A stretch of DNA of 64,000 nt from Perkinsus chesapeaki ATCC PRA-425 (GCA_013115145.1 JAAPAO010000015.1:62001-126000); one strand, 5' to 3'; shown: positions 3,001-36,351, counted from the stretch's first letter. Notes: a model not told the origin generated them from the sequence alone. Made by a program: numbers and translations.

Positions 3001-5309
3001 GCCCTCCCGGCCCACCCAACACCGACCGGCCCTGCCAGTGACGAGGTCAGTCAAGGATCGGCCAGCCTCCTCGAACCTGCCACCACTGCTCCCCCCCCAC
3101 GTAGCCACCCCTCCCTACGCTTTAAGGCTCTTGGCTGTCTCCTCCCAATAGACCGCCCACTTGTGCTGTTTTGCCTTAACCTCCTCCAGCTCCCTCTCCC
3201 TCGCCAGTGACCCTGCTTAAACCCGTCAAAGCACTGCATCTGCTACCCTTACCAGCCAGCAGGATCTGTAAGCTGATTATTCTTCTCCTTAATACCGATG
3301 ATGAGCCCTCAGGGGCCCTGACCTCTCCATCCTGCTCGCCACTGGTCGGTGATCCTACCCCCGAGTCTCCATCCAACCCGACTACCTTGCTCACCTCCCC
3401 TACTGTTAAAAGCTCCGGTGCCGCCATCATTAACAGCAATAGGAGGCCTCAACTGAGCTTGGCCAGCGGTCAATGCCGCCAACTGCCTCCTGGCCGCCTC
3501 CAACTCGGCCTGCCCACCGATGCTCTCCCTATATGCTCTCGTCACCTCTGCTCACCGTGAGGGTCTCAACAGTGCCCGTCAAGGATTCATTAAGGACCGC
3601 CTGACACTTGATTCGCTTGGCTCGGGCTGCGAACTTGATAGTCGATAGAGTCTCCCCGAAGTTGGTGGCCGATGGCGATATGGTAGCTGTGGTGCGGCAG
3701 GTAAGTAATCACCACACTACTGGCCCTACCAATAATGCTCGTGATGCTATTGCCTCCCAAACTGTCACGGAGGAGGAAGGTCAGCTTGGAGTCACGGAAA
3801 TGCGTGAAGGTAGATTGCCTAAGTGAACCAATCACAGGGACAGGCGAGGAGACCCTGGCCCACCTGGCGGCAGCCGGCCTGGCCTTACTGAGAGAGTATA
3901 TAACACTGGTCAAAACCGACAGTGACTTGTTGATAGCACCAGCCTGTATGACATCCATACCGCTCCCTCCTCTAATCGTGGCTGTAATACCTCCTTCACC
4001 CTTGCCTGGCTATCAGCTCCACTAACCCGGCCATGTACTGTATGTTGCTGTCTCTCACTACCAGCCAGATCGACCAGATTAAGGCTAGACTCCTTGGTCT
4101 GTGTAACCCCACCTAATGCTGCCTACTACCCTCACCACAGCCCTCACCAATCCCCCACCTGACTGTATTAGCTTAGTTGCCACACGAAGCATCACCACAC
4201 AGTGTGACCTAGACGACTGATCGTTCATCACCGTCGATCCAACCTGTAGCCGGCAGCCCATCCATCCCCCCAGACCATCACCGGCAGTACATGACGTTTG
4301 ACCAGAGCTCTACGCACTATAAGCTCTGCCTCTTTACTGTTATATACCGTATGCTCACTCAGTCCGTCAACATAAACCTATCAACACCTACTGCCCCTAC
4401 TCTACGCAATGAACAGCAGCCCACCCCTTTCCTAATATCATCTCTTAATTGTAACTGTTGGCCAGTCTGATCGAACAGGTCTGTGAGAGCCTCCCTGTAG
4501 ATCTCAACACAGCTAATCTTGCACATGTAACTGCATTAGCGGCAGCAGCAGCACCCAGCACCTGCGGAGCAGTCGCTACCTAAAGGTACCCTCAGAGTCC
4601 CTCTGCTTCGTTCGCAGTTCGTGGAATATGTTTTCAATAATCCTGCTGGTGAGCCCTCGGAGACCTGACCTCCCGCCCATTCTGCTACAGCCCCACCCCA
4701 GGGCCCTACCCTGGTCATTGCCTCGCCCTCTAGGAGGGCCCAGCATTGTAAAAGTCTTACCAGTACCTACGGACCAGATCCTATCAGACGGGGTGGCCAT
4801 GGGCTACCAGTCTGGCCATATACATATATAGAACCATTATACCCTTCCAAGCATGCACTCACCACTTGGACCCCTACACAGTCAAACACCTCTTGCTGGG
4901 CTGACATTGGCCCGAAGACACCATCGAAGGTGTACCTTCAGGTGTAGGTTAGCAGCATGCCACCCGCACTAATGCCACTACATCGTGCTAGAGTCACTCT
5001 GGTCCTTAGAAGGGTCACCAATAGCCACCGACTTGGCACTAGAATCAACCTAAAGGTAAACAACGTTCGACCCTGCAGCGAGGAACTGGACAAGTAAAGG
5101 CTCCATTGCAGCCCCTGGGTGAGTTCGGATACCCTATAGGACACCGAGGTCACACCGTTGATAACACAACATCTGTCCCGTCTTACCATAACCACATCAG
5201 GGCCTGCTGGTGCCTCCTTCTCCTTCTGATTCTTAGGTCTTACTCTAACAAATACCCTAACACACTCAGACCCTCCGCATGCAGGACGTATAGGAGGAGG
5301 AGCCAGCAT
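1..5309 (-). CDS. Kinesin motor protein with long low-complexity/coiled-coil tail; multi-exon, runs off the window start
   Basis: Spliced minus-strand exons give VRVFVRVRP, YGQTG/GKTFTMLG (P-loop), NDQSSRSH (switch I), LVDLAGSER (switch II) and RDSKLTFLLRDSLGGNS. ATG at 5309 (MLAPPPIRP). Tail exons between 1 and 3500 are assumed to belong to the same gene. Confidence 0.8.
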
Positions 5310-7087: not shown

Positions 7088-7772
7088 AGACCTTTATGTA
7101 CCTTTTTACCCATTAGTATCCTATAATGATTCCATATTAGTATCATCACTCTTGCATACATTTTTTATACTAGCTGAATGCGAGGACGTATAGTAGGCGA
7201 TGGTGAGCCATTTCTTTGTACGACGACAATCTGCACAAGACTGCTGCTGCTACTACTACGAACACAAATATTGTCTGTTCCATTAGAGTTGCGTTTGTCA
7301 GTGGAGGTTCTACAGCAGATGGCTCGAGGAACTGGTAACCTATTTAGCATCTATTCAACGTAAGCTTAAGTTCACCTATCGTGGAGGTTACCGCATCCGG
7401 TAGGCATGTGCATGCGTGCAAGATATTTTTTATCGGTACCAAATTAATGGTAACACACCACTACTGAACAACACAAGCCGCATTTTCGGAATGTACGGTT
7501 ATCTCGTCAACAACCTATCCAGCTAATGTTCAAATATATTGCCGCGTTATACCAACTATATCAATGAGCAGATGTCCCACCACGAGCCATCGCCAACCAA
7601 CGCACGCGAAGGCTTGCCGCTACTTACAACACTGAATCATCAAACTCGGATGGGACGTCAAATATAAGTTGTAGAATATAAAAATGGTAAAAGTACAATA
7701 GGCTGCGGCCTGTAGTGCCTCGAGATACTCATTAATCATCTTGCTTAACTCATCATGCATGCCAAAGGCGGC

Positions 7773-8192
<420 letters not shown>

Positions 8193-27308: not shown

Positions 27309-30300
27309 ATGTCATCTTCTGCCCCCAATAGAGCCATCGTTGTTGGCGGGGGTCTCGCTGGTTTCACTGCGGCCAACACCATCCTCGAGGCTGGTGGCCG
27401 AGTATTACTTATTGATAAATCTGCGTTCTGTGGAGGCAACTCTTCCAAGGCCACTTCGGGTATCAACGGTGCCGTGACGAAGACACAGAAGGCCTTAAAT
27501 GTTCAGGATTCCAATGAACTTTTTGAATCAGACTGTATGAAGGGTGGCGCCAAGCATCCCGAACTTGTCAAGGTTATGGTTGAGAACTCCGGCTCCTCTG
27601 TAGACTGGTTGATGGACAACTTCGACCTGGACCTATCTCTCCTTGCTCGCCTCGGTGGTCACTCTGTCGAGCGTACTCATCGTGGTAAGGAAAGGTTCCC
27701 TGGTATGACCATCACCTACGCTGAGATCCAAATGGCCGAGGCTATCGCCAAGAAGTTCCCTGATAGGTGCGAGATCTTGAACAAGTGCAGGGCAACCAAG
27801 TTGCTAACTACCCCCAACGGTGACGTCAACGGTGTGCAGTACACAACTAGGAAGGGTGACGTTATCGAGGAGTACGGCCCTGTTATTCTTGCTACTGGTG
27901 GCTTTGGTGCCGATTTCTCGGAATCCGGCATTCTCGCCAAGGTCCGCCCCGATCTACTTAAGCTGTCGACTACTAATGGTGAGCACTGCACTGGTGATGG
28001 CATTAAGATGGGCCAGGCCATCGGTGCTCAGACAGTCGATTTGGACTTCGTCCAGGTTCACCCCACTGGCTTAGTCAACCCCAAGGATCCCGATGCTAAG
28101 GTGAAGTTCCTTGCCGCTGAGGCCCTTAGGGGTGTAGGTGGCATTCTCTTGGATGCGAATGGAAAGAGGTTCGTTAATGAGCTCCATCGTCGTGACTACG
28201 TCTCCAATACTATGTTCAAGAACAAGGCTCCTTTCCGTCTCGTCCTCAACAGCAAGTCCGCTGAAGAGATCCATTGGCATTGTGAGCATTACAAGGGCCG
28301 AGGTGTTATGAAGGAGTTCAAGACTGGTCGTGATTTAGCTAAGGAGATGGGTATCAGCCCTTCTGTGTTGGAGCAGACCTTCAAGGAGTACAACGAGATT
28401 ATGAAGAAGCAAGTCAACGACCCTAACGGTGGTCCTTATGATGCCTACCCCTCTGGCAAGACCTACGATCCTTTCGGCAAGAAGTTCTTCAAGGACTACC
28501 CAATGTCTATCGACGACACCTTCCAGGTCGCCATTGTTACCCCTCTGGTTCACTACACCATGGGTGGTCTGAAGATCAACACTTTCGGTCAAGTCCTTGG
28601 TCCCAAGGACAAGCCTATCAAGGGTCTCTATGCTGCTGGTGAGGTTATGGGAGGCGTCCACGGCAACAACAGGCTTGGTGGTAACTCTTTGCTGGACTGT
28701 GTTGCCTATGGGCGTGTCACTGGTAAGCATCTGGCCTCTAACGTCCTCAAGTTGAAGGCTGATGATGCTGTTCCACTGAAGGACCTTAAGGAGGGTCGCA
28801 CCGCACCTAATGTTCGCGCCATCGTCGTAGGCGGTGGTTTGGCTGGATTCTCCGCGGCTAATACTATCTTGGAGAATGGTGGTAGTGTTATCTTGCTTGA
28901 TAAGTCTGCCTTCTGCGGTGGGAACTCCTCTAAGGCTACTTCTGGTATTAATGGTGCTTGCACCAAGACTCAGAAGGCTCTTGGCGTCAAGGATTCCAAT
29001 GAGCTCTTCTATAATGACTGCATGAAGGGTGGTGCTAAGCATCCTCATCTGGTCAAGGCCATGGTCGACAACTCTGGTGCCTCTGTCAACTGGTTGATGG
29101 ACAACTTTGACTTGGATCTTTCTCTCCTTGCTCGCCTCGGTGGTCACTCTGCTGAGCGTACTCATCGTGGTAAGGAAAGGTTCCCTGGTATGACCATCAC
29201 CTATGCTGAGATCCAAATGGCCGAGGCTATCGCCAAGAAGTTCCCTGATAGATGCCAGATCGTGAATAAGGCCCGTGTCACCGAGTTGCTTACCGACTCT
29301 CAGGGCACTGTTGTTGGCTGCAAATATACCGACAAGAAGGGCCAAGTTCATGAGGAGAAGGGTCCCGTCATCCTCGCCACTGGTGGCTTTGGTGCTGATT
29401 TTTCTCCTGATGGCATTTTGGCCAAGGTCCGTCCTGATCTCTTGAAGTTGGCCACCACCAACGGTGAGCACTGTACCGGTGATGGCATCAAGATGGGCAT
29501 GGCCGTTGGCGCTCAGACTGTCGATCTTGAGTTTGTCCAGGTTCACCCCACTGGGTTGGTCAACCCTAAGGACCCCGATACTAAGGTCAAGTTCTTGGCT
29601 GCGGAGGCACTTCGCGGTGTAGGTGGTATTCTGCTCGATGCTGATGGAAAGAGGTTCGTCAACGAGCTCCACCGTCGTGACTATGTCTCTAACACCATGT
29701 TCAAGAACAAGGGTCCCTTCCGTCTTGTGTTGAACTCTTCTTCATCCGAGGAGATTCACTGGCATTGTGAGCACTATAAGGGTCGCGGTGTCATGAAGGA
29801 GTTTGCTAGTGCTAATGCTCTCGCTCAGGAGATGGGGATCAACCCTTCTGTCCTGGACCAGACCTTCAAGGAGTACAACGCCATCATGAAGAAGCAGATC
29901 GACGATCCGGACAACGGCCCATATGATGCTTATCCAAGCGGCAAGACCCACGATCCCTTCGGCAAGAAGTTCTTCAAGCCCTATCCTATGAAGATGGATG
30001 ACCACTTCAATGTCGCCATTGTCACCCCATTGATCCATTACACCATGGGTGGCCTTAAGATTGATGATCACGGCCGTGTTCTCGCCGAGGGTGATAAGCC
30101 AATCCCGGGTCTCTACGCTGCTGGTGAGCTTATGGGTGGTGTCCATGGCAACAACCGTCTTGGTGGTAACTCCCTGCTAGACTGCGTGGTCTATGGCCGC
30201 CTTACTGGCAAGGACTGCGCTAAGTACATGCTGAAGGGTAAGACTAAGCCTGTCCCTCTGAAGTCTCTGAAGCAGGGCCTCACCAAGGATGTCAAGACGG

Positions 30301-33300
30301 TTATTGTTGTCGGTGGTGGTCTGGCCGGTTTCTCTGCAGCTAACACTGTCTTAGAGAAAGGTGGTCAAGTTCTGTTGCTCGACAAATCTGCCTTCTGCGG
30401 TGGTAACTCGTCTAAGGCTACTTCGGGTATCAATGGCGCCAACACCAAGACTCAGAAGGCTCTCGGTGTGAAGGACTCTAACGAGCTCTTCTACTCCGAT
30501 TGCATGAAGGGTGGTGCTAAGAAGCCCGATCTTGTCAACGCTATGGTTGAGAACTCTGGTACCTCTGTTAACTGGTTGATGGACAACTTCGACTTGGACC
30601 TATCCCTCCTTGCCCGCCTCGGTGGTCACTCTGTTGAGCGTACTCATCGTGGTAAGGAAAGGTTCCCTGGTATGACCATCACCTACGCTGAGATCCAAAT
30701 GGCCGAGGCTATCGCCAAGAACCATCCTGATAAGTGCAAGATAATGAACAAGGCTCGTGTCACCAAGTTGCTTACCGGTGATGATGGCTCTGTTACCGGC
30801 GTTGTTTATGAGACTAAGGATGGCCAGAAGCATGAGGCCTATGGTCCTGTTATTCTCGCTACTGGTGGTTTCGGTGCCGACTTCTCTCCTGATGGTATCC
30901 TGGCTAAGGTTCGCCCTGACTTGCTGGGTCTTTCTACTACCAACGGCGAGCACTGCACTGGTGATGGTATCAAGATGGGAATGGAGGTTGGAGCTGATAC
31001 CCTTGACTTGGAGTTTGTTCAAGTTCATCCTACTGGTTTGGTCAACCCTAAGGACCCCAATTCCAAGGTGAAGTTCCTTGCCGCTGAAGCCCTTAGGGGT
31101 GTAGGTGGTATTCTCTTGGACGCTGATGGAAACCGGTTTGTTAATGAGCTCCATCGTCGTGACTACGTCTCCAACACTATGTTCAAGAACAAGGCTCCCT
31201 TCCGTCTCGTCCTCAACAGCAAGTCCGCTGAAGAGATCCATTGGCATTGTGAGCACTACAAGGGCCGAGGTGTTATGAAGGAGTTTGCTACCGGCGCCGA
31301 CTTGGCTAAGGAGATGGGCATCCCTACTTCGAAGCTCGAGCAGACCTTCAAGACCTATAATGAGGTTATGCAAAAGCAGTTGAAGGATCCTGATGGAGGC
31401 CCGTATGATGCCTATCCCTCTGGCAAGACCTACGATCCGTTTGGCAAGAAGTTCTTCAAGGACTATCCTATGTCTGTCAACGACACCTTCCAGGTCGCCG
31501 TGGTCACTCCTTTGGTTCACTACACCATGGGCGGCTTAACCATTGACACCAAGGGTCGTGTTCTTGACAAGAAGGGTCAGCCTATCAAGGGTCTTTATGC
31601 TGCTGGTGAGGTTATGGGAGGCGTCCACGGCAACAACAGGCTTGGTGGTAACTCTCTACTGGATTGTGTTGTCTATGGCCGCCTTACTGGTGCGGACTGT
31701 GCCAACTACGCCGGTGCTGACGAGCCTGTAAGCCTCAAGCAGCTGAAGAGCACTACCACTGCTGTTGCTGCTCCACCTGCCGCTCCGGCCAAGGCCGCCC
31801 CTAAGCCCGCTCCTGTAGCTGCCCCGGCTCCCGTAGCTGCTCCTTCAGGTCCTGCTCCTATCACCATGGCTGATGTGGCCAAGCACAACACCAAGGACGA
31901 CTGCTGGGTGGTTATCAACGGTGACATCCTCAATGTGACCGACTTCCTTCCCGATCATCCCGGTGGAGATCTCGCTATTATGACTTTCGCTGGTAGAGAT
32001 GCCACGACTGAGTTCAACATGATTCACCCGCCGGATGTGATTGAGAAGTACGCTCCTGATGCTATCATCGGTCAGGTTGGTGTGGCCCCTGCTGGTGGTG
32101 CTCCGGCTGCAGCTGCCCCCGCGGCCGCAGCAGCTCCTGCCGCTGGTGGTGGTATTACTATGGACGAAGTGGCTAAGCACAATACTAAGGATGACTGCTG
32201 GGTTGTTATCAATGGTGATGTTCTTAACGTTACGGAGTTCCTTCCTGACCATCCTGGTGGAGACCTTGCTATTATGACTTTCGCTGGTCGCGACGCCTCC
32301 AACGAGTTCAATATGATCCACCCGCCAGATGTTATTGAGAAGTATGCTCCGGAGGCTGTCATCGGTCAAGTTGGTACTGGTGCCCCTGCCGCAGCCCCGG
32401 CTGCTGGCGCCCCTGCTGCTCCTGTCCCGGCCAATGGTAAGACTATGGAAGAGGTCGCCAAGCACAACAAGAGAGAAGATTGCTGGGTTGTTATTAATGG
32501 CCAGGTCCTCGATGTCACGGAGTTCCTTCCTGATCATCCTGGTGGAGATCTGGCTATCCTGACCTTCGCTGGTCGTGACGCTACCAATGAGTTCAACATG
32601 ATTCATCCGCCGGATGTCATTGAGAAATATGCTCCGGAGGCTGTCATTGGACCTGTTGTGCAAGCCACTGCTCAACCGGCGGCTCCGGCTGCTGCTGGTG
32701 GACTCACTCAACCTCTTCTTGCCGACCCGAGGGTCGCCAAAGAACAATGGTGGGGTGAGGACCGCAACACTGCTGTTATGCATGGACCATTGGGAGAGTC
32801 CGTCTACTCTTATTGTGCTGGTGTTGTCTATTTCGCCTGGTTGCTCATTCTAGAGACATTGAAGACTATCTTTACTGTCAAGAACTACAAGGTTATTCAT
32901 GACAAGTCTGGATTGACTAGATCCGCTATGTTCTTGATTGTTTTCGTGATTATTCACGGCCTTGGTAATCTTCACTGTTTCTTTGGTCCAGATCACTTCA
33001 ATGGTTATGCCTACTTCCTCAACCATCCGTGCCCCTGGAGTACTCTTCTTCTTCCAGTTGAGATCTATCTTCTCGCTGCTGGGCTGCTCCACGTAACGGT
33101 TGGTCTTGTCCGTACCTACAAGTTCAAGACTATCAATACGGCATTCGACCAACTGTGGCTTATTACGACTGGGGTTGTCCTTCTGGTGTTCTTGATCGTG
33201 CACTTGATACAGTTCCGCCTCGTCTCTGAGGCCGCCGCCCCCCAGTATTACTTCCGCGCTAAGTGGATGTATCCCTTCTTCTGCGACAAGGATGACACTT

Positions 33301-33611
33301 CGTGTGCTGTGGTTCACTTCAAGGATCTTTACAAGATGGAATTCCAGATCTTCGAGAGCTTAGGTTGGGTCTGCTTCTATCTTGTTGGTGTTATGTCTTT
33401 CATTCTCCACGTGAAGGAGGGTCTGAGGAAGGTCATTGCTGCTCATCCGGCAGTCCCAAGGAAGTACAAGGGCAGGACAACTACCATTGCCAATCTCGTT
33501 GTGACGTTCATTGGTCTAATCTACTTGTCCTATCCCATCTTCTGCTACTTCGCCCCCGTCAAGAGCTGGAAGAAGTATGATGAAGAGATGATTCAGCCTG
33601 GTACGCCCTAG
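27309..33611 (+). CDS. Multidomain fumarate reductase: 3x FccA/Osm1-type FAD domain + 3x cytochrome b5 + SdhC/cytochrome b558-like membrane anchor
   Basis: Intronless 2100-aa ORF. It has three GGGLAG...QVHPTG...EALRG...RRD...HYTMGG...HGNNRLGGNSL units (about aa 8-480, 503-975, 997-1470) and three KHNxKxDCW...HPGG...IHP b5 units (about aa 1518, 1616, 1711). Five hydrophobic helices carry His1883/1928/1965/2034. Confidence 0.92.
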   Translation: MSSSAPNRAIVVGGGLAGFTAANTILEAGGRVLLIDKSAFCGGNSSKATSGINGAVTKTQKALNVQDSNELFESDCMKGGAKHPELVKVMVENSGSSVDWLMDNFDLDLSLLARLGGHSVERTHRGKERFPGMTITYAEIQMAEAIAKKFPDRCEILNKCRATKLLTTPNGDVNGVQYTTRKGDVIEEYGPVILATGGFGADFSESGILAKVRPDLLKLSTTNGEHCTGDGIKMGQAIGAQTVDLDFVQVHPTGLVNPKDPDAKVKFLAAEALRGVGGILLDANGKRFVNELHRRDYVSNTMFKNKAPFRLVLNSKSAEEIHWHCEHYKGRGVMKEFKTGRDLAKEMGISPSVLEQTFKEYNEIMKKQVNDPNGGPYDAYPSGKTYDPFGKKFFKDYPMSIDDTFQVAIVTPLVHYTMGGLKINTFGQVLGPKDKPIKGLYAAGEVMGGVHGNNRLGGNSLLDCVAYGRVTGKHLASNVLKLKADDAVPLKDLKEGRTAPNVRAIVVGGGLAGFSAANTILENGGSVILLDKSAFCGGNSSKATSGINGACTKTQKALGVKDSNELFYNDCMKGGAKHPHLVKAMVDNSGASVNWLMDNFDLDLSLLARLGGHSAERTHRGKERFPGMTITYAEIQMAEAIAKKFPDRCQIVNKARVTELLTDSQGTVVGCKYTDKKGQVHEEKGPVILATGGFGADFSPDGILAKVRPDLLKLATTNGEHCTGDGIKMGMAVGAQTVDLEFVQVHPTGLVNPKDPDTKVKFLAAEALRGVGGILLDADGKRFVNELHRRDYVSNTMFKNKGPFRLVLNSSSSEEIHWHCEHYKGRGVMKEFASANALAQEMGINPSVLDQTFKEYNAIMKKQIDDPDNGPYDAYPSGKTHDPFGKKFFKPYPMKMDDHFNVAIVTPLIHYTMGGLKIDDHGRVLAEGDKPIPGLYAAGELMGGVHGNNRLGGNSLLDCVVYGRLTGKDCAKYMLKGKTKPVPLKSLKQGLTKDVKTVIVVGGGLAGFSAANTVLEKGGQVLLLDKSAFCGGNSSKATSGINGANTKTQKALGVKDSNELFYSDCMKGGAKKPDLVNAMVENSGTSVNWLMDNFDLDLSLLARLGGHSVERTHRGKERFPGMTITYAEIQMAEAIAKNHPDKCKIMNKARVTKLLTGDDGSVTGVVYETKDGQKHEAYGPVILATGGFGADFSPDGILAKVRPDLLGLSTTNGEHCTGDGIKMGMEVGADTLDLEFVQVHPTGLVNPKDPNSKVKFLAAEALRGVGGILLDADGNRFVNELHRRDYVSNTMFKNKAPFRLVLNSKSAEEIHWHCEHYKGRGVMKEFATGADLAKEMGIPTSKLEQTFKTYNEVMQKQLKDPDGGPYDAYPSGKTYDPFGKKFFKDYPMSVNDTFQVAVVTPLVHYTMGGLTIDTKGRVLDKKGQPIKGLYAAGEVMGGVHGNNRLGGNSLLDCVVYGRLTGADCANYAGADEPVSLKQLKSTTTAVAAPPAAPAKAAPKPAPVAAPAPVAAPSGPAPITMADVAKHNTKDDCWVVINGDILNVTDFLPDHPGGDLAIMTFAGRDATTEFNMIHPPDVIEKYAPDAIIGQVGVAPAGGAPAAAAPAAAAAPAAGGGITMDEVAKHNTKDDCWVVINGDVLNVTEFLPDHPGGDLAIMTFAGRDASNEFNMIHPPDVIEKYAPEAVIGQVGTGAPAAAPAAGAPAAPVPANGKTMEEVAKHNKREDCWVVINGQVLDVTEFLPDHPGGDLAILTFAGRDATNEFNMIHPPDVIEKYAPEAVIGPVVQATAQPAAPAAAGGLTQPLLADPRVAKEQWWGEDRNTAVMHGPLGESVYSYCAGVVYFAWLLILETLKTIFTVKNYKVIHDKSGLTRSAMFLIVFVIIHGLGNLHCFFGPDHFNGYAYFLNHPCPWSTLLLPVEIYLLAAGLLHVTVGLVRTYKFKTINTAFDQLWLITTGVVLLVFLIVHLIQFRLVSEAAAPQYYFRAKWMYPFFCDKDDTSCAVVHFKDLYKMEFQIFESLGWVCFYLVGVMSFILHVKEGLRKVIAAHPAVPRKYKGRTTTIANLVVTFIGLIYLSYPIFCYFAPVKSWKKYDEEMIQPGTP

Positions 33612-35305
33612 AGGAATGATAAGATTTTTTCCTACGATGCAAATGTGTCTCTGTAGTTGAATATGCAGAGAAGAATGATGGATGACTATGATTAACTGAT
33701 GGTCCAGATACCATCTGTCTACTTTATCTTATGTAGCACATCTCACTAGAATATTCGCCTATTACTTGATGTTATTGCGTTGTCAGTCGAGAAAGTCCTA
33801 CCAGTGCAGTATTCATAATACCGCGGAACAGTATTGCGTCCCTAAGGTGCCGGCTGGTCCCATTCTAATCGGGTAGTGGAGTAGCAAGTGTTGTGACCAG
33901 GGTGAGTTGCTCGATTGACAAGCGTGACACTACGCTCTACTCTATTAGTAACACTTAGTAGTAATCTATTGGGTGAGCCAGCCGTAACTAGCAGAATGAA
34001 CTGGACGCTAGCGACAGGCCTGGAGCGTTATCACGCAATGATGGAAAGAGAGACAACTTTCACGCACGCAGCTGCATGGCAACTTTTGGGTACACTGTAA
34101 ACAAACCCGACCCACCTGTCAACCCTTTTGTTCAAACGAATACAACACTAGATGTCTCTGGAGAGTGGAGAGCCGTTACACGGAAGCGAGAAGACTGCGA
34201 ACCGTAGCGGGGCCAAAATAGATCCCGGACAGTGCGAGACCATGGAGGGACTTATCGGCACACATACGATCTCCCGTCACCTTACGTTGGTCGAATTCTG
34301 TTCGGCTTCGTGGAGCTAAGAGTTTATGGGGTTCTCCCGCGTAGCCGTGCAAGCATGTACTATAGACTGCATTGTGCCCCGCCTGACCCATTTGGCTCGC
34401 TATATTTGTCTCGGTACAGCTACGAGCATCTGCTACTAGCAGACTCCCTGCTCAGCTTCGGTTAGGTGGTGAGTGCTTTATTCCGTTTGGCAGTGAAGTT
34501 GCTAACAACAGGAGTTTCGCCATTTGCTTGGACGAGAGCGGAGGTTTGGCTCTTCCCCAGTTGTTTTTGAGACCCTCCGCTATAGTATCACGGTGTGGTA
34601 GAGATTGACGAACTCTTGCTGCTCAATCTTCGGGGATCTGATGGGTATTATTTACGTCCTAACTATGTGGGCGGAAGTGAAACACAGTCGCACAAGATCA
34701 CTGACCTTGTGGCACAAGGCTTGTGCGAGCAGGTGTACTGCCACGGCAGCTTCTAAACAGAAACTGTAGCCATTCCTCATCATCAGAACCGTAGTGTTCG
34801 CAGAACGGTACGCTTATTATATGAAGGAATGGTCACACCGTGGGTAATCGCAGAAACGTGAGAGAAATGGTTGAAGCCCAAGGAGAGATTTAAGGAACTT
34901 AGGCACGTGGTCACATGTCATGACTTGACTGATACCGGACTGCCATGAAAATCCCTTCAGCTTTTCGCAAAAGCATAACCGACTTACTCCGTAACTGAGA
35001 CAGAACTTGCTAAGACATGAACTCTTCGAGTCTCGTACGATGATCTTTATGATTGACACCCTGCGTTATGAGTGCTAGTGTTTTCGTTGTGGTATCCAAC
35101 AATACATAAAAGAAGCTTCTCACGCGGCAATCACTTATAACTAAACTGAATTCTGGTATTGAATTCAGAACTCACATACATCAGGAAGCTCAGTGGTTAT
35201 TATTCAGCGAGTTGTTACTATTGGCCAAGGTCACCTTGACTAAAGCAATAGAAATCATTCACTTGACTAAGGTAACACAAACAGAGAGCGGATGGAAAAT
35301 GGTTA

Positions 35306-36351
35306 TCAAATGTGGGGTAACAGATTTGCAGCAAGCATGCATCGAGCGCTGCCACCCGATATCTCAATCGTTTCCAAAGGTACTGAGACAACCTTGACGT
35401 GCTTGTTGAGAGATGAGAGCTGTTCTCGGGTTAAACACGAAAATGCTGTTTCCGACATGACCAACCGGCGGACACCATCGCTACCTGTGAGCTCAAACGC
35501 ATTGCCAGCGAACTTGTCAATCTGTGCCAACGTTAAGAGAATGACCTCCTTCTGTGTGTCCTTCAACTTTGCCAACACGCGCGCTTTCTCATTTGCGTCT
35601 CTCACCGCATCTAGGCAGACAAGCGCAAACTCTGTACCCAAAGTTAGCATCACGTTGGTGTGGTAAATGCAGACCCCTCGTCCATCCACCGCAGAGAAGG
35701 GCACGATCTCAAAGTTAGAAAAGTGCTCCGACCATCTCTGAATGGCATCCTTGGTGGCTCTCTTCGACACTGCGACATAGACGGCTCGGTTGGGATTATC
35801 GAACACCAGTGCACCGGTTCCCTCCAAGAATGCGTCGGAGTCTTCTAGTGTGGTCAAGTCGACTTCTCGCTTGACAACGTAGCCCGAATCCTGCAGTTCC
35901 CTAATCAGTTTCTCGAGAAGCCCACGCTCTCGGCGGCGGGATAAGGCGAGCATTGGGTAGATGGCAAGCGTGCCATCAGCATGGGTTGTGAACCAGTTAT
36001 TTGGGAATACTGCATCTGGTTTGGGAGGATCAGCTTCATCCTGGACCACAGTAACTTGAACCTGCATCATGAGATATGAGCAGCTTATCAGCGCTTGTTA
36101 AGCACGAAAATAAGTACGTGTTCAACGAAAAGAAGGTCAACCCGTTCGATCGATCGATAAGCTCTCACTTTGACGGTCTCCCGAAGAACTCTGACGAAGT
36201 TGTCAAATTCATTCTGGGCTTTTTTGAGGAGTCCAGCGCGATTAACTCCGACATCGGTCTGAAAACCATTGTCGAGCGCTGTCTCAGGGTTCGAATAAAA
36301 CACAGCAGGGCGGACCATAATGACGGCCGATGGCGCCTGCCGAGGCAGCAT
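35306..36351 (-). CDS. Amidinotransferase-superfamily hydrolase, CtlX/COG4874-type (citrulline/arginine utilisation)
   Basis: MVRP..F..N.ETA.DN.FQ, PDAVFPNNWF, YPM, LEGTG, IYHTNVM and GGSARCM (Asp/His/Cys catalytic motifs). Single intron at 36062-36168. Confidence 0.88.

What the first reader, a model, noticed from the sequence alone, without database searches (positions are those of the whole stretch)
27309..33611. Candidate single-chain, Fe-S-free membrane fumarate reductase: 3 flavo-domains + 3 cytochrome b5 + diheme-type anchor
Seen in sequence: one 2100-aa ORF with three full flavodomains. Each keeps the GxGxxG FAD motif and the equivalents of Shewanella FccA catalytic residues H365 (QVHPT), R402 (RRD), H504 (HYTMGG) and R544 (NRLGGNSL). 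Ala/Pro linkers then lead to three b5 domains, each with both axial His (HPGG, IHP), and a five-helix membrane domain. There are no CxxCH motifs, no Fe-S Cys clusters and no obvious N-terminal targeting peptide. Established knowledge: FccA receives electrons from c-hemes, yeast Osm1/Frd1 from free flavin, kinetoplastid FRD from a fused NADH reductase module, and complex II/QFR from a membrane cytochrome b via an Fe-S subunit. Inference: here b5 hemes replace the Fe-S subunit, giving a wire of membrane hemes -> b5 -> FAD -> fumarate in one polypeptide. It could act as an electron sink for quinol or for ER-lumen oxidative folding under hypoxia. Related Osm1-labelled proteins probably exist in dinoflagellate/perkinsid databases, but I know of no characterisation of this architecture.
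Basis: partly seen in the sequence, partly recalled or inferred. Interest (0 to 1): 0.92.

Follow-up and report, generated by a model that had tools for sequence, protein, structure and literature searches.

The report
Iron-sulfur-free membrane fumarate reductase fusion
A parasite of the Perkinsus group encodes one 2100-residue protein that joins three fumarate-reducing enzymes, three small heme carriers and a bacterial-type two-heme membrane anchor; this way of wiring fumarate reduction to a membrane without iron-sulfur clusters is common in dinoflagellates, and I found no study of it.

Summary
Window 27309-33611 (+) is one uninterrupted 2100-aa ORF. It has three Osm1/FccA-class fumarate reductase (FRD) domains, three acidic cytochrome b5 domains on Ala/Pro linkers, and a C-terminal membrane domain.

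The membrane domain is a type-B (b558/FrdC) diheme cytochrome b. The evidence is TIGR02046 at E 5e-15, structural Z 19.2/14.4/13.8 to the Chloroflexus, Desulfovibrio and Wolinella anchors, and four invariant His that align with the experimentally defined heme ligands.

One correction: there are six hydrophobic helices, not five. A conserved extra helix precedes the five-helix core.

It is not an assembly artefact. The repeats are only 77-79% identical in DNA. The P. olseni orthologue has the same 3+3+1 layout with copy-by-copy orthology (94-95% against 79-82%). dN/dS is 0.03-0.10 for every module.

The (FRD)n-(b5)n-anchor architecture recurs in perkinsids, dinoflagellates and marine metatranscriptomes. 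Ten literature searches found no description of it.

The proposed wire (membrane hemes -> b5 -> FAD -> fumarate) is the best-supported reading but is untested. The electron donor, the target membrane and the side on which b5 docks are all open.

The scan noted this same stretch before (s1-215508, s1-225971).

The parts
27309..33611 (+). Whole gene: single intronless ORF of 2100 aa plus stop codon
   Evidence: Stops lie in frame upstream. An X1 contig of 6501 bp covers 31626-35400 with no differences.
27309..28790 (+). FRD1: Osm1/FccA-class flavoprotein domain, non-covalent FAD type (aa 1-494)
   Evidence: TIGR01813 scores 387.5 bits against a cut-off of 285. Yeast Osm1 5GLG matches at E 2e-87. 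It is 95% identical to P. olseni FRD1. dN/dS is 0.037. RNA-run contigs lie on 27434-28570.
28791..30263 (+). FRD2 (aa 495-985)
   Evidence: 82% identical to FRD1 and 94% to P. olseni FRD2. All catalytic motifs are present. dN/dS is 0.033.
30264..31748 (+). FRD3 (aa 986-1480)
   Evidence: 81-82% identical to FRD1 and FRD2, and 95% to P. olseni FRD3. Motifs are present. dN/dS is 0.036.
31749..31859 (+). First Ala/Pro-rich flexible linker. Similar linkers lie at 32079-32153, 32373-32438 and 32658-32705.
   Evidence: The linkers are 73-100% A/P/G/V. In the model the stretch that follows b5c (model residues 89-116, aa 1788-1815) has pLDDT under 50; this covers most of the 32658-32705 linker and the start of the membrane-domain segment.
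31860..32078 (+). Cytochrome b5 domain a (aa 1518-1590). Axial His at 1550 and 1573. Net charge -8.
   Evidence: Pfam Cyt-b5; motifs and charge.
32154..32372 (+). Cytochrome b5 domain b (aa 1616-1688). His 1648 and 1671. Net charge -9.
32439..32657 (+). Cytochrome b5 domain c (aa 1711-1783). His 1743 and 1766. Net charge -7.
   Evidence: The modelled fold matches b5 structures: 4b8n at Z 13.7, 58% identity.
32802..32873 (+). Extra conserved hydrophobic helix ('helix 0', aa 1832-1855) in front of the b558 core. It has an invariant Glu and a conserved T-I-F..K-N motif.
   Evidence: Hydropathy. The model has a helix at 133-156. It is present in all 40 family members aligned. It lies outside the range matched to bacterial anchors.
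32907..33551 (+). Five-helix type-B diheme cytochrome b core (aa 1867-2081). Heme ligands are H1883 and H1965 (distal-heme equivalents) and H1928 and H2034 (proximal-heme equivalents), with codons at 32955, 33201, 33090 and 33408.
   Evidence: TIGR02046 at E 5.2e-15. 9lay_C Z 19.2, 5xmj_C Z 14.4, 1e7p_C Z 13.8. The His are invariant in 40 sequences. They align to CaSDH His32/135 and His81/188 (with PMC12663545).

Best explanation
This is a real, selectively maintained gene of a Perkinsus-group protist. It encodes a modular, membrane-anchored flavocytochrome.

Proposed mechanism:
- The C-terminal domain is a bacterial-type (type B, b558/FrdC) cytochrome b that holds two stacked b hemes across the membrane.
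- It collects electrons in or through the membrane, either from a quinol or from a donor on the far side.
- The three strongly acidic b5 domains, tethered by flexible Ala/Pro linkers, act as mobile one-electron carriers.
- They take electrons from the membrane hemes to the non-covalent FAD of the three Osm1/FccA-type domains, which reduce fumarate to succinate.
- The b5 domains therefore do the job of the Fe-S subunit of complex II/QFR, or of the c-heme domain of FccA.
- With no targeting peptide on an N-terminal region of about 1830 residues, the catalytic domains most likely face the cytosol. The enzyme would then be a cytosolic fumarate electron sink coupled to a membrane.

Shown: the domain identities, cofactor-ligand conservation, fold, conservation of the architecture, and purifying selection.

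Inferred: the direction of electron flow, the donor, the membrane, the side on which b5 docks, and the enzymatic activity.

The confidence of 0.55 is for the mechanism (membrane hemes -> b5 -> FAD -> fumarate). That the gene and its architecture are real I put at about 0.95.
For: Domains and catalytic or ligand residues:
- for the flavodomains and b5 domains.
- For the anchor: profile hit at E 5e-15 and structural Z 19.2/14.4/13.8 to three solved type-B anchors.
- Four invariant His align to the published heme bD and bP ligands of Chloroflexus SdhC (PMC12663545).

The gene is real:
- Repeats are 77-79% identical in DNA, and P. olseni shows copy-by-copy orthology.
- dN/dS is 0.03-0.10 in every module at dS of about 1.
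- Independent contigs tile the gene.

The architecture recurs with variable copy numbers: 2+2+1, 2+1+1, 1+1+1 and 1+2+1. This includes transcriptome-derived ORFs of dinoflagellates.

Comparative logic:
- The same FRD-b5 pair (53-56% and 65-72% identical) is fused in fungi and other protists to acyl-CoA oxidase or dehydrogenase domains, which are electron-input modules.
- This suggests b5 is the entry port to this FRD.
- The b5 domains carry net charge -7 to -9 and the FRD domains +2 to +5.
- Non-covalent FAD flavoproteins of this class work as fumarate reductases, not succinate dehydrogenases (established knowledge for FccA and Osm1).
Against: - Nothing was assayed.
- The only transcription evidence in this organism is a few contigs over FRD1 from one small RNA run. 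No RNA run was listed for the membrane part.
- Ubiquinol (about +100 mV) is a poor donor for fumarate (+30 mV) through b5 and low-potential FAD. No low-potential quinone is known to me in perkinsids, and I did not test for one.
- The quinone-binding Glu-C64 of the Chloroflexus distal site is not conserved (alignment).
- The canonical proximal quinone site needs the Fe-S subunit, which is absent.
- The anchor scores below the curated TIGR02046 cut-off (55.6 against 96 bits).
- It is unresolved whether helix 0 crosses the membrane, so it is unknown which heme b5 can reach.
- b5 domains can also be reduced by a separate NADH-cytochrome b5 reductase, which would make the membrane hemes unnecessary as donors.
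Confidence: 0.55

Rival explanations
1. NADH-driven system with the anchor as tether or exit. A separate NADH-cytochrome b5 reductase reduces the b5 domains, and these feed the FRD domains. This would be the functional equivalent of the kinetoplastid NADH-fumarate reductase. The diheme domain would serve mainly to hold the enzyme on a membrane, or as a second outlet that passes electrons from b5 across the membrane or to a quinone.
For: - b5 domains are the classical substrates of NADH-b5 reductases (established knowledge).
- Redox potentials favour NADH over ubiquinol as a donor.
- Relatives with five or six b5 domains plus the anchor and no FRD exist, such as P0029 (P. marinus, named 'succinate dehydrogenase, putative') and P0064. 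The b5-anchor pair may therefore have a role independent of FRD.
- Structural similarity of the six-helix domain to b561, Dcytb and NOX transmembrane electron carriers is weak, at Z 6-8.
Against: - All four heme ligands, and many residues on both membrane faces, are invariant across 40 divergent sequences. dN/dS of the anchor is 0.037. This is far more constraint than a tether needs.
- No b5-reductase domain is fused here.
- The FRD-less relatives may be truncated gene models or contigs.
Confidence: 0.22
2. Transmembrane electron import. The two hemes form a wire across the membrane that brings electrons from a donor in another compartment to cytosolic fumarate. The other compartment could be the ER lumen (for oxidative folding, as proposed for yeast Osm1), a vacuole or the outside. 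No quinone is involved. This is a special case of the best explanation (same path from the hemes onward, different donor), so its odds overlap with it.
For: - There are two hemes stacked across the bilayer, with invariant residues on both faces.
- The canonical quinone-site residues are not conserved.
- A conserved 53-residue loop with a beta hairpin, and an aromatic motif around F-N-G-Y-G-Y-F, sit on the face opposite the Lys/Arg-rich loops.
- Yeast Osm1 is reported to support anaerobic oxidative folding (established knowledge, not checked here).
Against: No partner has been identified. The compartment is unknown. The Cys pair in the long loop is conserved only within Perkinsus.
Confidence: 0.15
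3. Reverse direction. The enzyme would be a succinate dehydrogenase that passes electrons from succinate through FAD, b5 and the membrane hemes to a quinone or an external acceptor.
For: Public records name relatives 'succinate dehydrogenase, putative'. The nearest solved anchor belongs to a succinate:menaquinone reductase.
Against: - The flavodomain belongs to the non-covalent-FAD FccA/Osm1 class. It lacks the His that carries covalent FAD in SdhA: the sequence reads N-S-S-K-A-T-S-G at that place, as in Osm1.
- Such enzymes oxidise succinate very poorly (established knowledge).
Confidence: 0.04
4. Artefact. The triplication, or the fusion, would be an assembly or gene-call error, or a decaying gene.
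For: - Short-read contigs break inside the repeats.
- In one public assembly the P. olseni orthologue is split over three reading frames, bridged by the gene model.
Against: - Repeats are only 77-79% identical in DNA, with a longest identical run of 86 bp.
- Each copy has its own orthologue in P. olseni.
- dN/dS is about 0.04.
- One contig spans the FRD3 end, the three b5 domains, the anchor and the 3' flank with no differences.
- The same architecture appears in unrelated transcriptomes.
Confidence: 0.03

Closest known systems
Yeast soluble fumarate reductase Osm1/Frd1 (PDB 5GLG, 5ZYN) and Shewanella flavocytochrome c3 FccA (1QJD, 1D4C)
   Same: Same flavoprotein family (TIGR01813 above its cut-off; Osm1 at E 2e-87, FccA about 1e-60 to 1e-66). 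Same catalytic His/Arg/His/Arg set and non-covalent FAD type.
   Different: Osm1 has no heme domain and no membrane part. FccA takes electrons from a fused tetraheme c domain in the periplasm. Here there are three flavodomains in tandem, b5 hemes in place of c hemes, and an integral membrane cytochrome b.
Type-B quinol:fumarate and succinate:menaquinone oxidoreductases (Wolinella FrdABC 1E7P/1QLA, D. gigas 5XMJ, Chloroflexus SdhABC 9LAY, B. subtilis SdhCAB)
   Same: The same five-helix diheme anchor fold with the same four His ligands. The overall chemistry links fumarate/succinate to a membrane.
   Different: - Those enzymes use a covalent-FAD SdhA/FrdA and an Fe-S subunit with three clusters; neither is present here.
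- The anchor here has an extra N-terminal helix and a 53-residue loop insertion.
- It is fused to its partners.
- It is eukaryotic and only 13-21% identical.
- Eukaryotic complex II otherwise uses a two-subunit, one-heme (type C) anchor.
Kinetoplastid NADH-dependent fumarate reductase (FRDg/FRDm)
   Same: A eukaryotic Osm1-class FRD domain fused to its own electron-input module.
   Different: There the input is an NADH-binding cytochrome-b5-reductase-like domain plus an ApbE-like domain, and the enzyme is soluble. Here no such domains are found. The fused modules are b5 hemes and a membrane cytochrome b.
FRD-b5-acyl-CoA oxidase/dehydrogenase fusions of fungi and other protists (P0008, P0011-P0018)
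   Same: The same FRD-b5 pair in the same order, 53-56% (FRD) and 65-72% (b5) identical.
   Different: The third module is a soluble acyl-CoA-oxidising flavoprotein in place of a membrane cytochrome b. There is a single FRD and a single b5. My searches found no characterisation of these either.
Flavocytochrome b2 (CYB2), the label given to Symbiodinium relatives
   Same: It contains a b5-type heme domain (51-57% identical to the b2 heme domain).
   Different: There is no FMN-dependent lactate dehydrogenase domain. The label is a by-product of the b5 match.

Membership tests
FccA/Osm1-class soluble fumarate reductase flavoprotein (TIGR01813 flavo_cyto_c) | Profile score above the curated cut-off | tested here: met
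   FRD1 scores 387.5 bits against a cut-off of 285.45. FRD2 and FRD3 are 81-82% identical to it.
FccA/Osm1-class soluble fumarate reductase flavoprotein (TIGR01813 flavo_cyto_c) | Substrate-binding and catalytic residues (FccA His365, Arg402, His504, Arg544/545 equivalents) | tested here: met
   The motifs QVHPT, HRRD, HYTMGG and NRLGGNSL occur in all three copies. They align with the same motifs of Osm1; the Arg of the R-D motif is the residue changed in the Osm1 mutant entry 6KU6.
FccA/Osm1-class soluble fumarate reductase flavoprotein (TIGR01813 flavo_cyto_c) | Non-covalent FAD (no SdhA-type flavinylated His) | tested here: met
   The segment after the dinucleotide fold reads N-S-S-K-A-T-S-G-I-N-G and aligns to N-S-I-K-A-S-S-G-I-N-G of Osm1, with no His. 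Cofactor binding itself was not measured.
FccA/Osm1-class soluble fumarate reductase flavoprotein (TIGR01813 flavo_cyto_c) | Fumarate reductase activity | not testable with these tools
   Needs an enzyme assay.
Cytochrome b5 (PF00173) | Profile hit above the gathering score, both axial His, and the b5 fold | tested here: met
   Three stretches give 249 bits in total against a cut-off of 23.7. HPGG and the second His are present in each copy. The b5c model matches 4b8n at Z 13.7.
Type-B diheme anchor of SQR/QFR (TIGR02046 sdhC_b558_fam) | Profile score above the curated cut-off | tested here: not met
   55.6 bits, E 5.2e-15, covering 193 of 212 profile positions, but the cut-off is 96 bits. The match is significant but divergent. 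Pfam Sdh_cyt gives only E 6.1.
Type-B diheme anchor of SQR/QFR (TIGR02046 sdhC_b558_fam) | Five-helix fold of a single anchor subunit | tested here: met
   The model has pLDDT 82. Matches are 9lay_C at Z 19.2 (208 aligned residues), 5xmj_C at Z 14.4 and 1e7p_C at Z 13.8.
Type-B diheme anchor of SQR/QFR (TIGR02046 sdhC_b558_fam) | Four His ligands for two b hemes on helices I, II, IV and V | tested here: met
   H1883, H1928, H1965 and H2034 are invariant in 40 sequences. They align to His32, 81, 135 and 188 of Chloroflexus SdhC, which are the published ligands of hemes bD and bP. Heme binding was not measured.
Type-B diheme anchor of SQR/QFR (TIGR02046 sdhC_b558_fam) | Quinone-site residues | tested here: inconclusive
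   Glu-C64 of the Chloroflexus distal site aligns to a non-acidic position. The proximal site is built with SdhB, which is absent. Other invariant polar and aromatic residues exist on both faces.
Complex II / quinol:fumarate reductase holoenzyme | Fe-S subunit with three clusters and a covalent-FAD flavoprotein | tested here: not met
   The ORF has no CxxC or Cys cluster. No Fer2/Fer4-type domain is found. The flavodomain is of the non-covalent class. A separate Fe-S partner encoded elsewhere cannot be excluded with these tools.
Kinetoplastid NADH-fumarate reductase | Fused NADH/FAD cytochrome-b5-reductase-like and ApbE-like domains | tested here: not met
   Pfam lists only FAD_binding_2-related families and Cyt-b5.

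The most novel reading that the evidence does not exclude
This would be the founding member of a third design of membrane-coupled fumarate reductase. It is Fe-S-free and built from a eukaryotic soluble-type FRD, tethered b5 shuttles and a type-B diheme cytochrome b, a class I know only from bacteria and archaea. The design is widespread and strongly expressed in perkinsids and dinoflagellates. There it would form a major route from a membrane quinol pool, or from across a membrane, to cytosolic fumarate.
Probability: 0.4. Interest if true: 0.85.

Novelty: new variant of a known kind. Interest (0 to 1): 0.75.

Why it matters
Fumarate reduction is the best-known alternative to oxygen respiration. 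Three wiring schemes are described:
- Fe-S clusters plus a membrane anchor (complex II/QFR).
- c hemes (FccA).
- Free flavin or a fused NADH module (yeast, kinetoplastids).

A single chain in which b5 hemes link a membrane diheme cytochrome to soluble-type fumarate reductases would be a fourth scheme. It would also place a bacterial type-B anchor in eukaryotes.

The family is large in dinoflagellate transcriptomes and marine eukaryote metatranscriptomes. Relatives rank among the most sequenced transcripts of Oxyrrhis (PMC3942190). Its function therefore bears on redox balance and hypoxia tolerance of major plankton groups and of Perkinsus.

It is directly testable by expression, heme and flavin stoichiometry, redox titration and activity assays.

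Tried and rejected
- Assembly artefact: rejected on repeat divergence, orthology of each copy, dN/dS and spanning contigs.
- RNA support in this organism: weak. Only small contigs over FRD1 in run X6 were found, and no RNA run was listed for the membrane part. A single transcript is therefore not shown here.
- Prokaryotic close relatives of the anchor: a scan of 185,579 species genomes with two family motifs found none. The patterns were specific to the eukaryotic family, so this says little about distant relatives. Language-model look-alikes are bacterial b558 SdhC clusters, commonest in Planctomycetota, at scores under 0.9, so they are leads only.
- Sequence search of solved structures with the anchor profile gave only 9lay_C at E 0.03. 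The fold search was needed to show the relation.
- Pfam Sdh_cyt does not detect the anchor (E 6.1).
- Topology of helix 0 is not settled.
  - Its hydropathy (19-residue mean up to 1.7) and family-wide hydrophobicity fit a membrane-spanning helix.
  - The Lys/Arg-rich loops, together with an untranslocatable 1830-residue N-terminal region, fit a surface helix better.
  - I therefore left the second structure job unused.
- Literature: ten full-text searches found no description. They covered Perkinsus or dinoflagellate with fumarate reductase, b5 fusions, Osm1, and Pfam names. Subscription-only papers are outside the library.
- One Pfam call failed on size. It was replaced by BLAST with the window's own domains.

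Full report
**1. Observation**

Window 27309-33611 (+) is a single ATG-to-stop ORF of 2100 codons. It is by far the longest ORF in the 64-kb window; the next longest on an independent locus is 340 aa. Stops lie in frame just upstream, and the FAD-binding fold starts at residue 8. This ORF therefore has no room for a targeting peptide.

Pfam finds three FAD_binding_2 and three Cyt-b5 stretches (E 1.6e-245 and 2.2e-75). There is no CxxCH and no CxxC, and the 33 Cys are scattered. The linkers are 73-100% Ala/Pro/Gly/Val.

One point needs correcting. The membrane part has six hydrophobic helices, not five.

**2. The gene is real**

- The three flavodomain repeats are only 77-79% identical in DNA, with a longest identical run of 86 bp. 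Collapse or expansion during assembly is therefore unlikely.
- The nearest public protein is P. olseni P0001, 84% identical over aa 1480-2100. It has the same 3+3+1 layout.
- Each FRD copy is 94-95% identical to its positional counterpart and 79-82% to the other copies. The triplication is therefore older than the split of the two species.
- Codon comparison with the P. olseni locus gives dN/dS of 0.037, 0.033 and 0.036 for FRD1-3, 0.06-0.10 for the b5 domains and 0.037 for the membrane domain, at dS of about 1. Every module is under strong purifying selection.
- Contigs from public DNA runs of two samples tile the gene at 100% identity. One 6.5-kb contig covers the end of FRD3, all three b5 domains, the membrane domain and the 3' flank without a difference.
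- RNA evidence in this organism is thin. A small RNA run has contigs over FRD1 only, and none was listed for the membrane part.

**3. The parts**

*Flavodomains.* They belong to the FccA/Osm1 class. TIGR01813 scores 387 bits, above its cut-off. The best solved relative is yeast Osm1 (E 2e-87), followed by the Shewanella flavocytochromes c3. The position of the flavinylated His of SdhA is occupied as in Osm1, so the FAD should be non-covalent.

*b5 domains.* They carry both axial His and are strongly acidic, with net charge -7 to -9. The FRD domains are slightly basic.

*Membrane domain.* The C-terminal 300 residues hit the b558 SdhC/FrdC family. TIGR02046 gives E 5.2e-15 over 193 of 212 profile positions, though below the curated cut-off. 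An AlphaFold model of b5c plus the membrane domain, built on 40 sequences, has pLDDT 82. It matches three solved type-B anchors, and each match begins after the first hydrophobic helix:

| Solved anchor | Chain | Z |
|---|---|---|
| Chloroflexus SdhC | 9lay_C | 19.2 |
| D. gigas QFR | 5xmj_C | 14.4 |
| Wolinella FrdC | 1e7p_C | 13.8 |

Four His are invariant in 40 family members: H1883, H1928, H1965 and H2034. In the HMMER alignment they pair with His32, His81, His135 and His188 of Chloroflexus SdhC. The structure paper identifies these as the axial ligands of the distal heme (32/135) and the proximal heme (81/188) (PMC12663545). The domain is therefore a type-B diheme cytochrome b with two additions:

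- A conserved N-terminal helix ('helix 0', aa 1832-1855), with an invariant Glu and a conserved Thr-Ile-Phe..Lys-Asn motif.
- A 53-residue loop with a beta hairpin between helices IV and V.

**4. Distribution**

The (FRD)n-(b5)n-anchor architecture recurs with other copy numbers: 2+3+1, 2+2+1, 2+1+1, 1+1+1 and 1+2+1. There are also b5-only forms with five or six b5 domains.

- Sources are P. olseni, P. marinus, Prorocentrum, Yihiella, MMETSP transcriptomes and many metagenome or metatranscriptome contigs.
- A profile of the anchor finds 1445 representatives at E <= 0.001 and 130 at E <= 1e-30.
- A second search lists at least 1000 proteins. Most come from marine eukaryote catalogues and dinoflagellates. 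Where they are named at all, the names are 'CYB2', 'succinate dehydrogenase, putative' or 'hypothetical'.
- In an Oxyrrhis EST survey, hits to P. marinus 'succinate dehydrogenase, putative' and to fumarate reductases are among the most abundant transcripts. I could not confirm that those accessions are this family (PMC3942190).
- The same FRD-b5 pair is fused in fungi and other protists to acyl-CoA oxidase or dehydrogenase domains.

**5. Mechanism**

The best-supported reading is an electron path from the membrane hemes through tethered b5 domains to FAD and then to fumarate. The b5 domains would replace the Fe-S subunit. Four points support it:

- The flavoprotein class works in the reductive direction.
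- b5 is the constant neighbour of this FRD, while the third module varies among input-type modules.
- The charges of b5 and FRD are complementary.
- The Ala/Pro linkers are of the kind that allows domain movement.

Three things remain open.

- *Donor.* On standard potentials ubiquinol is a poor donor. The Chloroflexus distal-site Glu is not conserved, and the proximal site needs the missing Fe-S subunit.
- *Side of b5 docking.* Helix 0 is hydrophobic enough to span the membrane across the family. That would put b5 beside the distal-heme equivalent. However, the Lys/Arg-rich loops and the untranslocatable N-terminal region favour a surface helix, with b5 beside the proximal heme. I had no model coordinates to settle this.
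- *Target membrane.* This is unknown.

Rival readings are given in the Rival explanations section with their odds. They are b5 reduction by a separate NADH-b5 reductase with the anchor as tether or exit, pure transmembrane electron import, and the reverse (succinate-oxidising) direction.

**6. Comparison and novelty**

All three building blocks are known families. The combination fails the defining features of complex II/QFR (no Fe-S subunit, no covalent-FAD flavoprotein), of FccA (no c hemes) and of the kinetoplastid NADH enzyme (no reductase domain).

To my knowledge, type-B diheme anchors have been described only in bacteria and archaea. Ten full-text searches found no description of this architecture. 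The proteins do sit unannotated in public databases.

I class it as a new variant of a known kind, with high interest. The scan's own earlier notes on this stretch (s1-215508, s1-225971) reached the same domain reading, and I tested it here.

Noticed in passing
L001:3001-9309 (P. olseni GCA_013115135.1, JABANP010000077.1): The orthologue is not one ORF in this assembly. The reading frame changes near 4490-4518, 7447-7551 and 7766-7855, and the public gene model (2056 aa) bridges these as introns. They could be real short introns or indel errors. The window's copy is uninterrupted.
   Followed up: partly
P0008, P0011-P0018 (fungi such as Calcarisporiella, other protists, metagenomes): The same FRD-b5 pair is fused to acyl-CoA oxidase or dehydrogenase domains (about 1180-1440 aa). 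This suggests an acyl-CoA:fumarate oxidoreductase. My searches found no description of it.
   Followed up: partly
P0002, P0029 (P. marinus XP_002784279), P0064, AFDB C5L1H3: Perkinsus has paralogues of the family. One has at least two FRD domains, three b5 domains and the anchor (67% identical anchor). Others have five or six b5 domains and the anchor but no FRD, and are publicly named 'succinate dehydrogenase, putative'. They may be truncated models or a distinct b5-anchor protein.
   Followed up: partly
P0045, P0053, P0058, P0075, P0101, P0107 (dinoflagellate transcriptomes and metagenomes): Relatives of 900-1040 aa carry a flavodomain only 27-35% identical to the window's FRD, one or two b5 domains and the anchor. 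The substrate of these flavodomains may not be fumarate.
   Followed up: no
window:33315-33346: A 3.9-kb contig of run X1 shares only about 32 bases with the membrane-domain coding region and then diverges. It is probably a paralogous anchor gene elsewhere in the genome.
   Followed up: no
window:28335-29672, 30600-31520, 31845-32783 (- strand): Long antisense ORFs (306-445 aa) lie inside the gene. They are most likely by-products of its codon composition and repeats, not genes.
   Followed up: no
window:1-64000: This 6.3-kb gene is intronless, while no other ORF in the window on an independent locus exceeds 340 aa. The neighbouring genes are probably split by introns.
   Followed up: no
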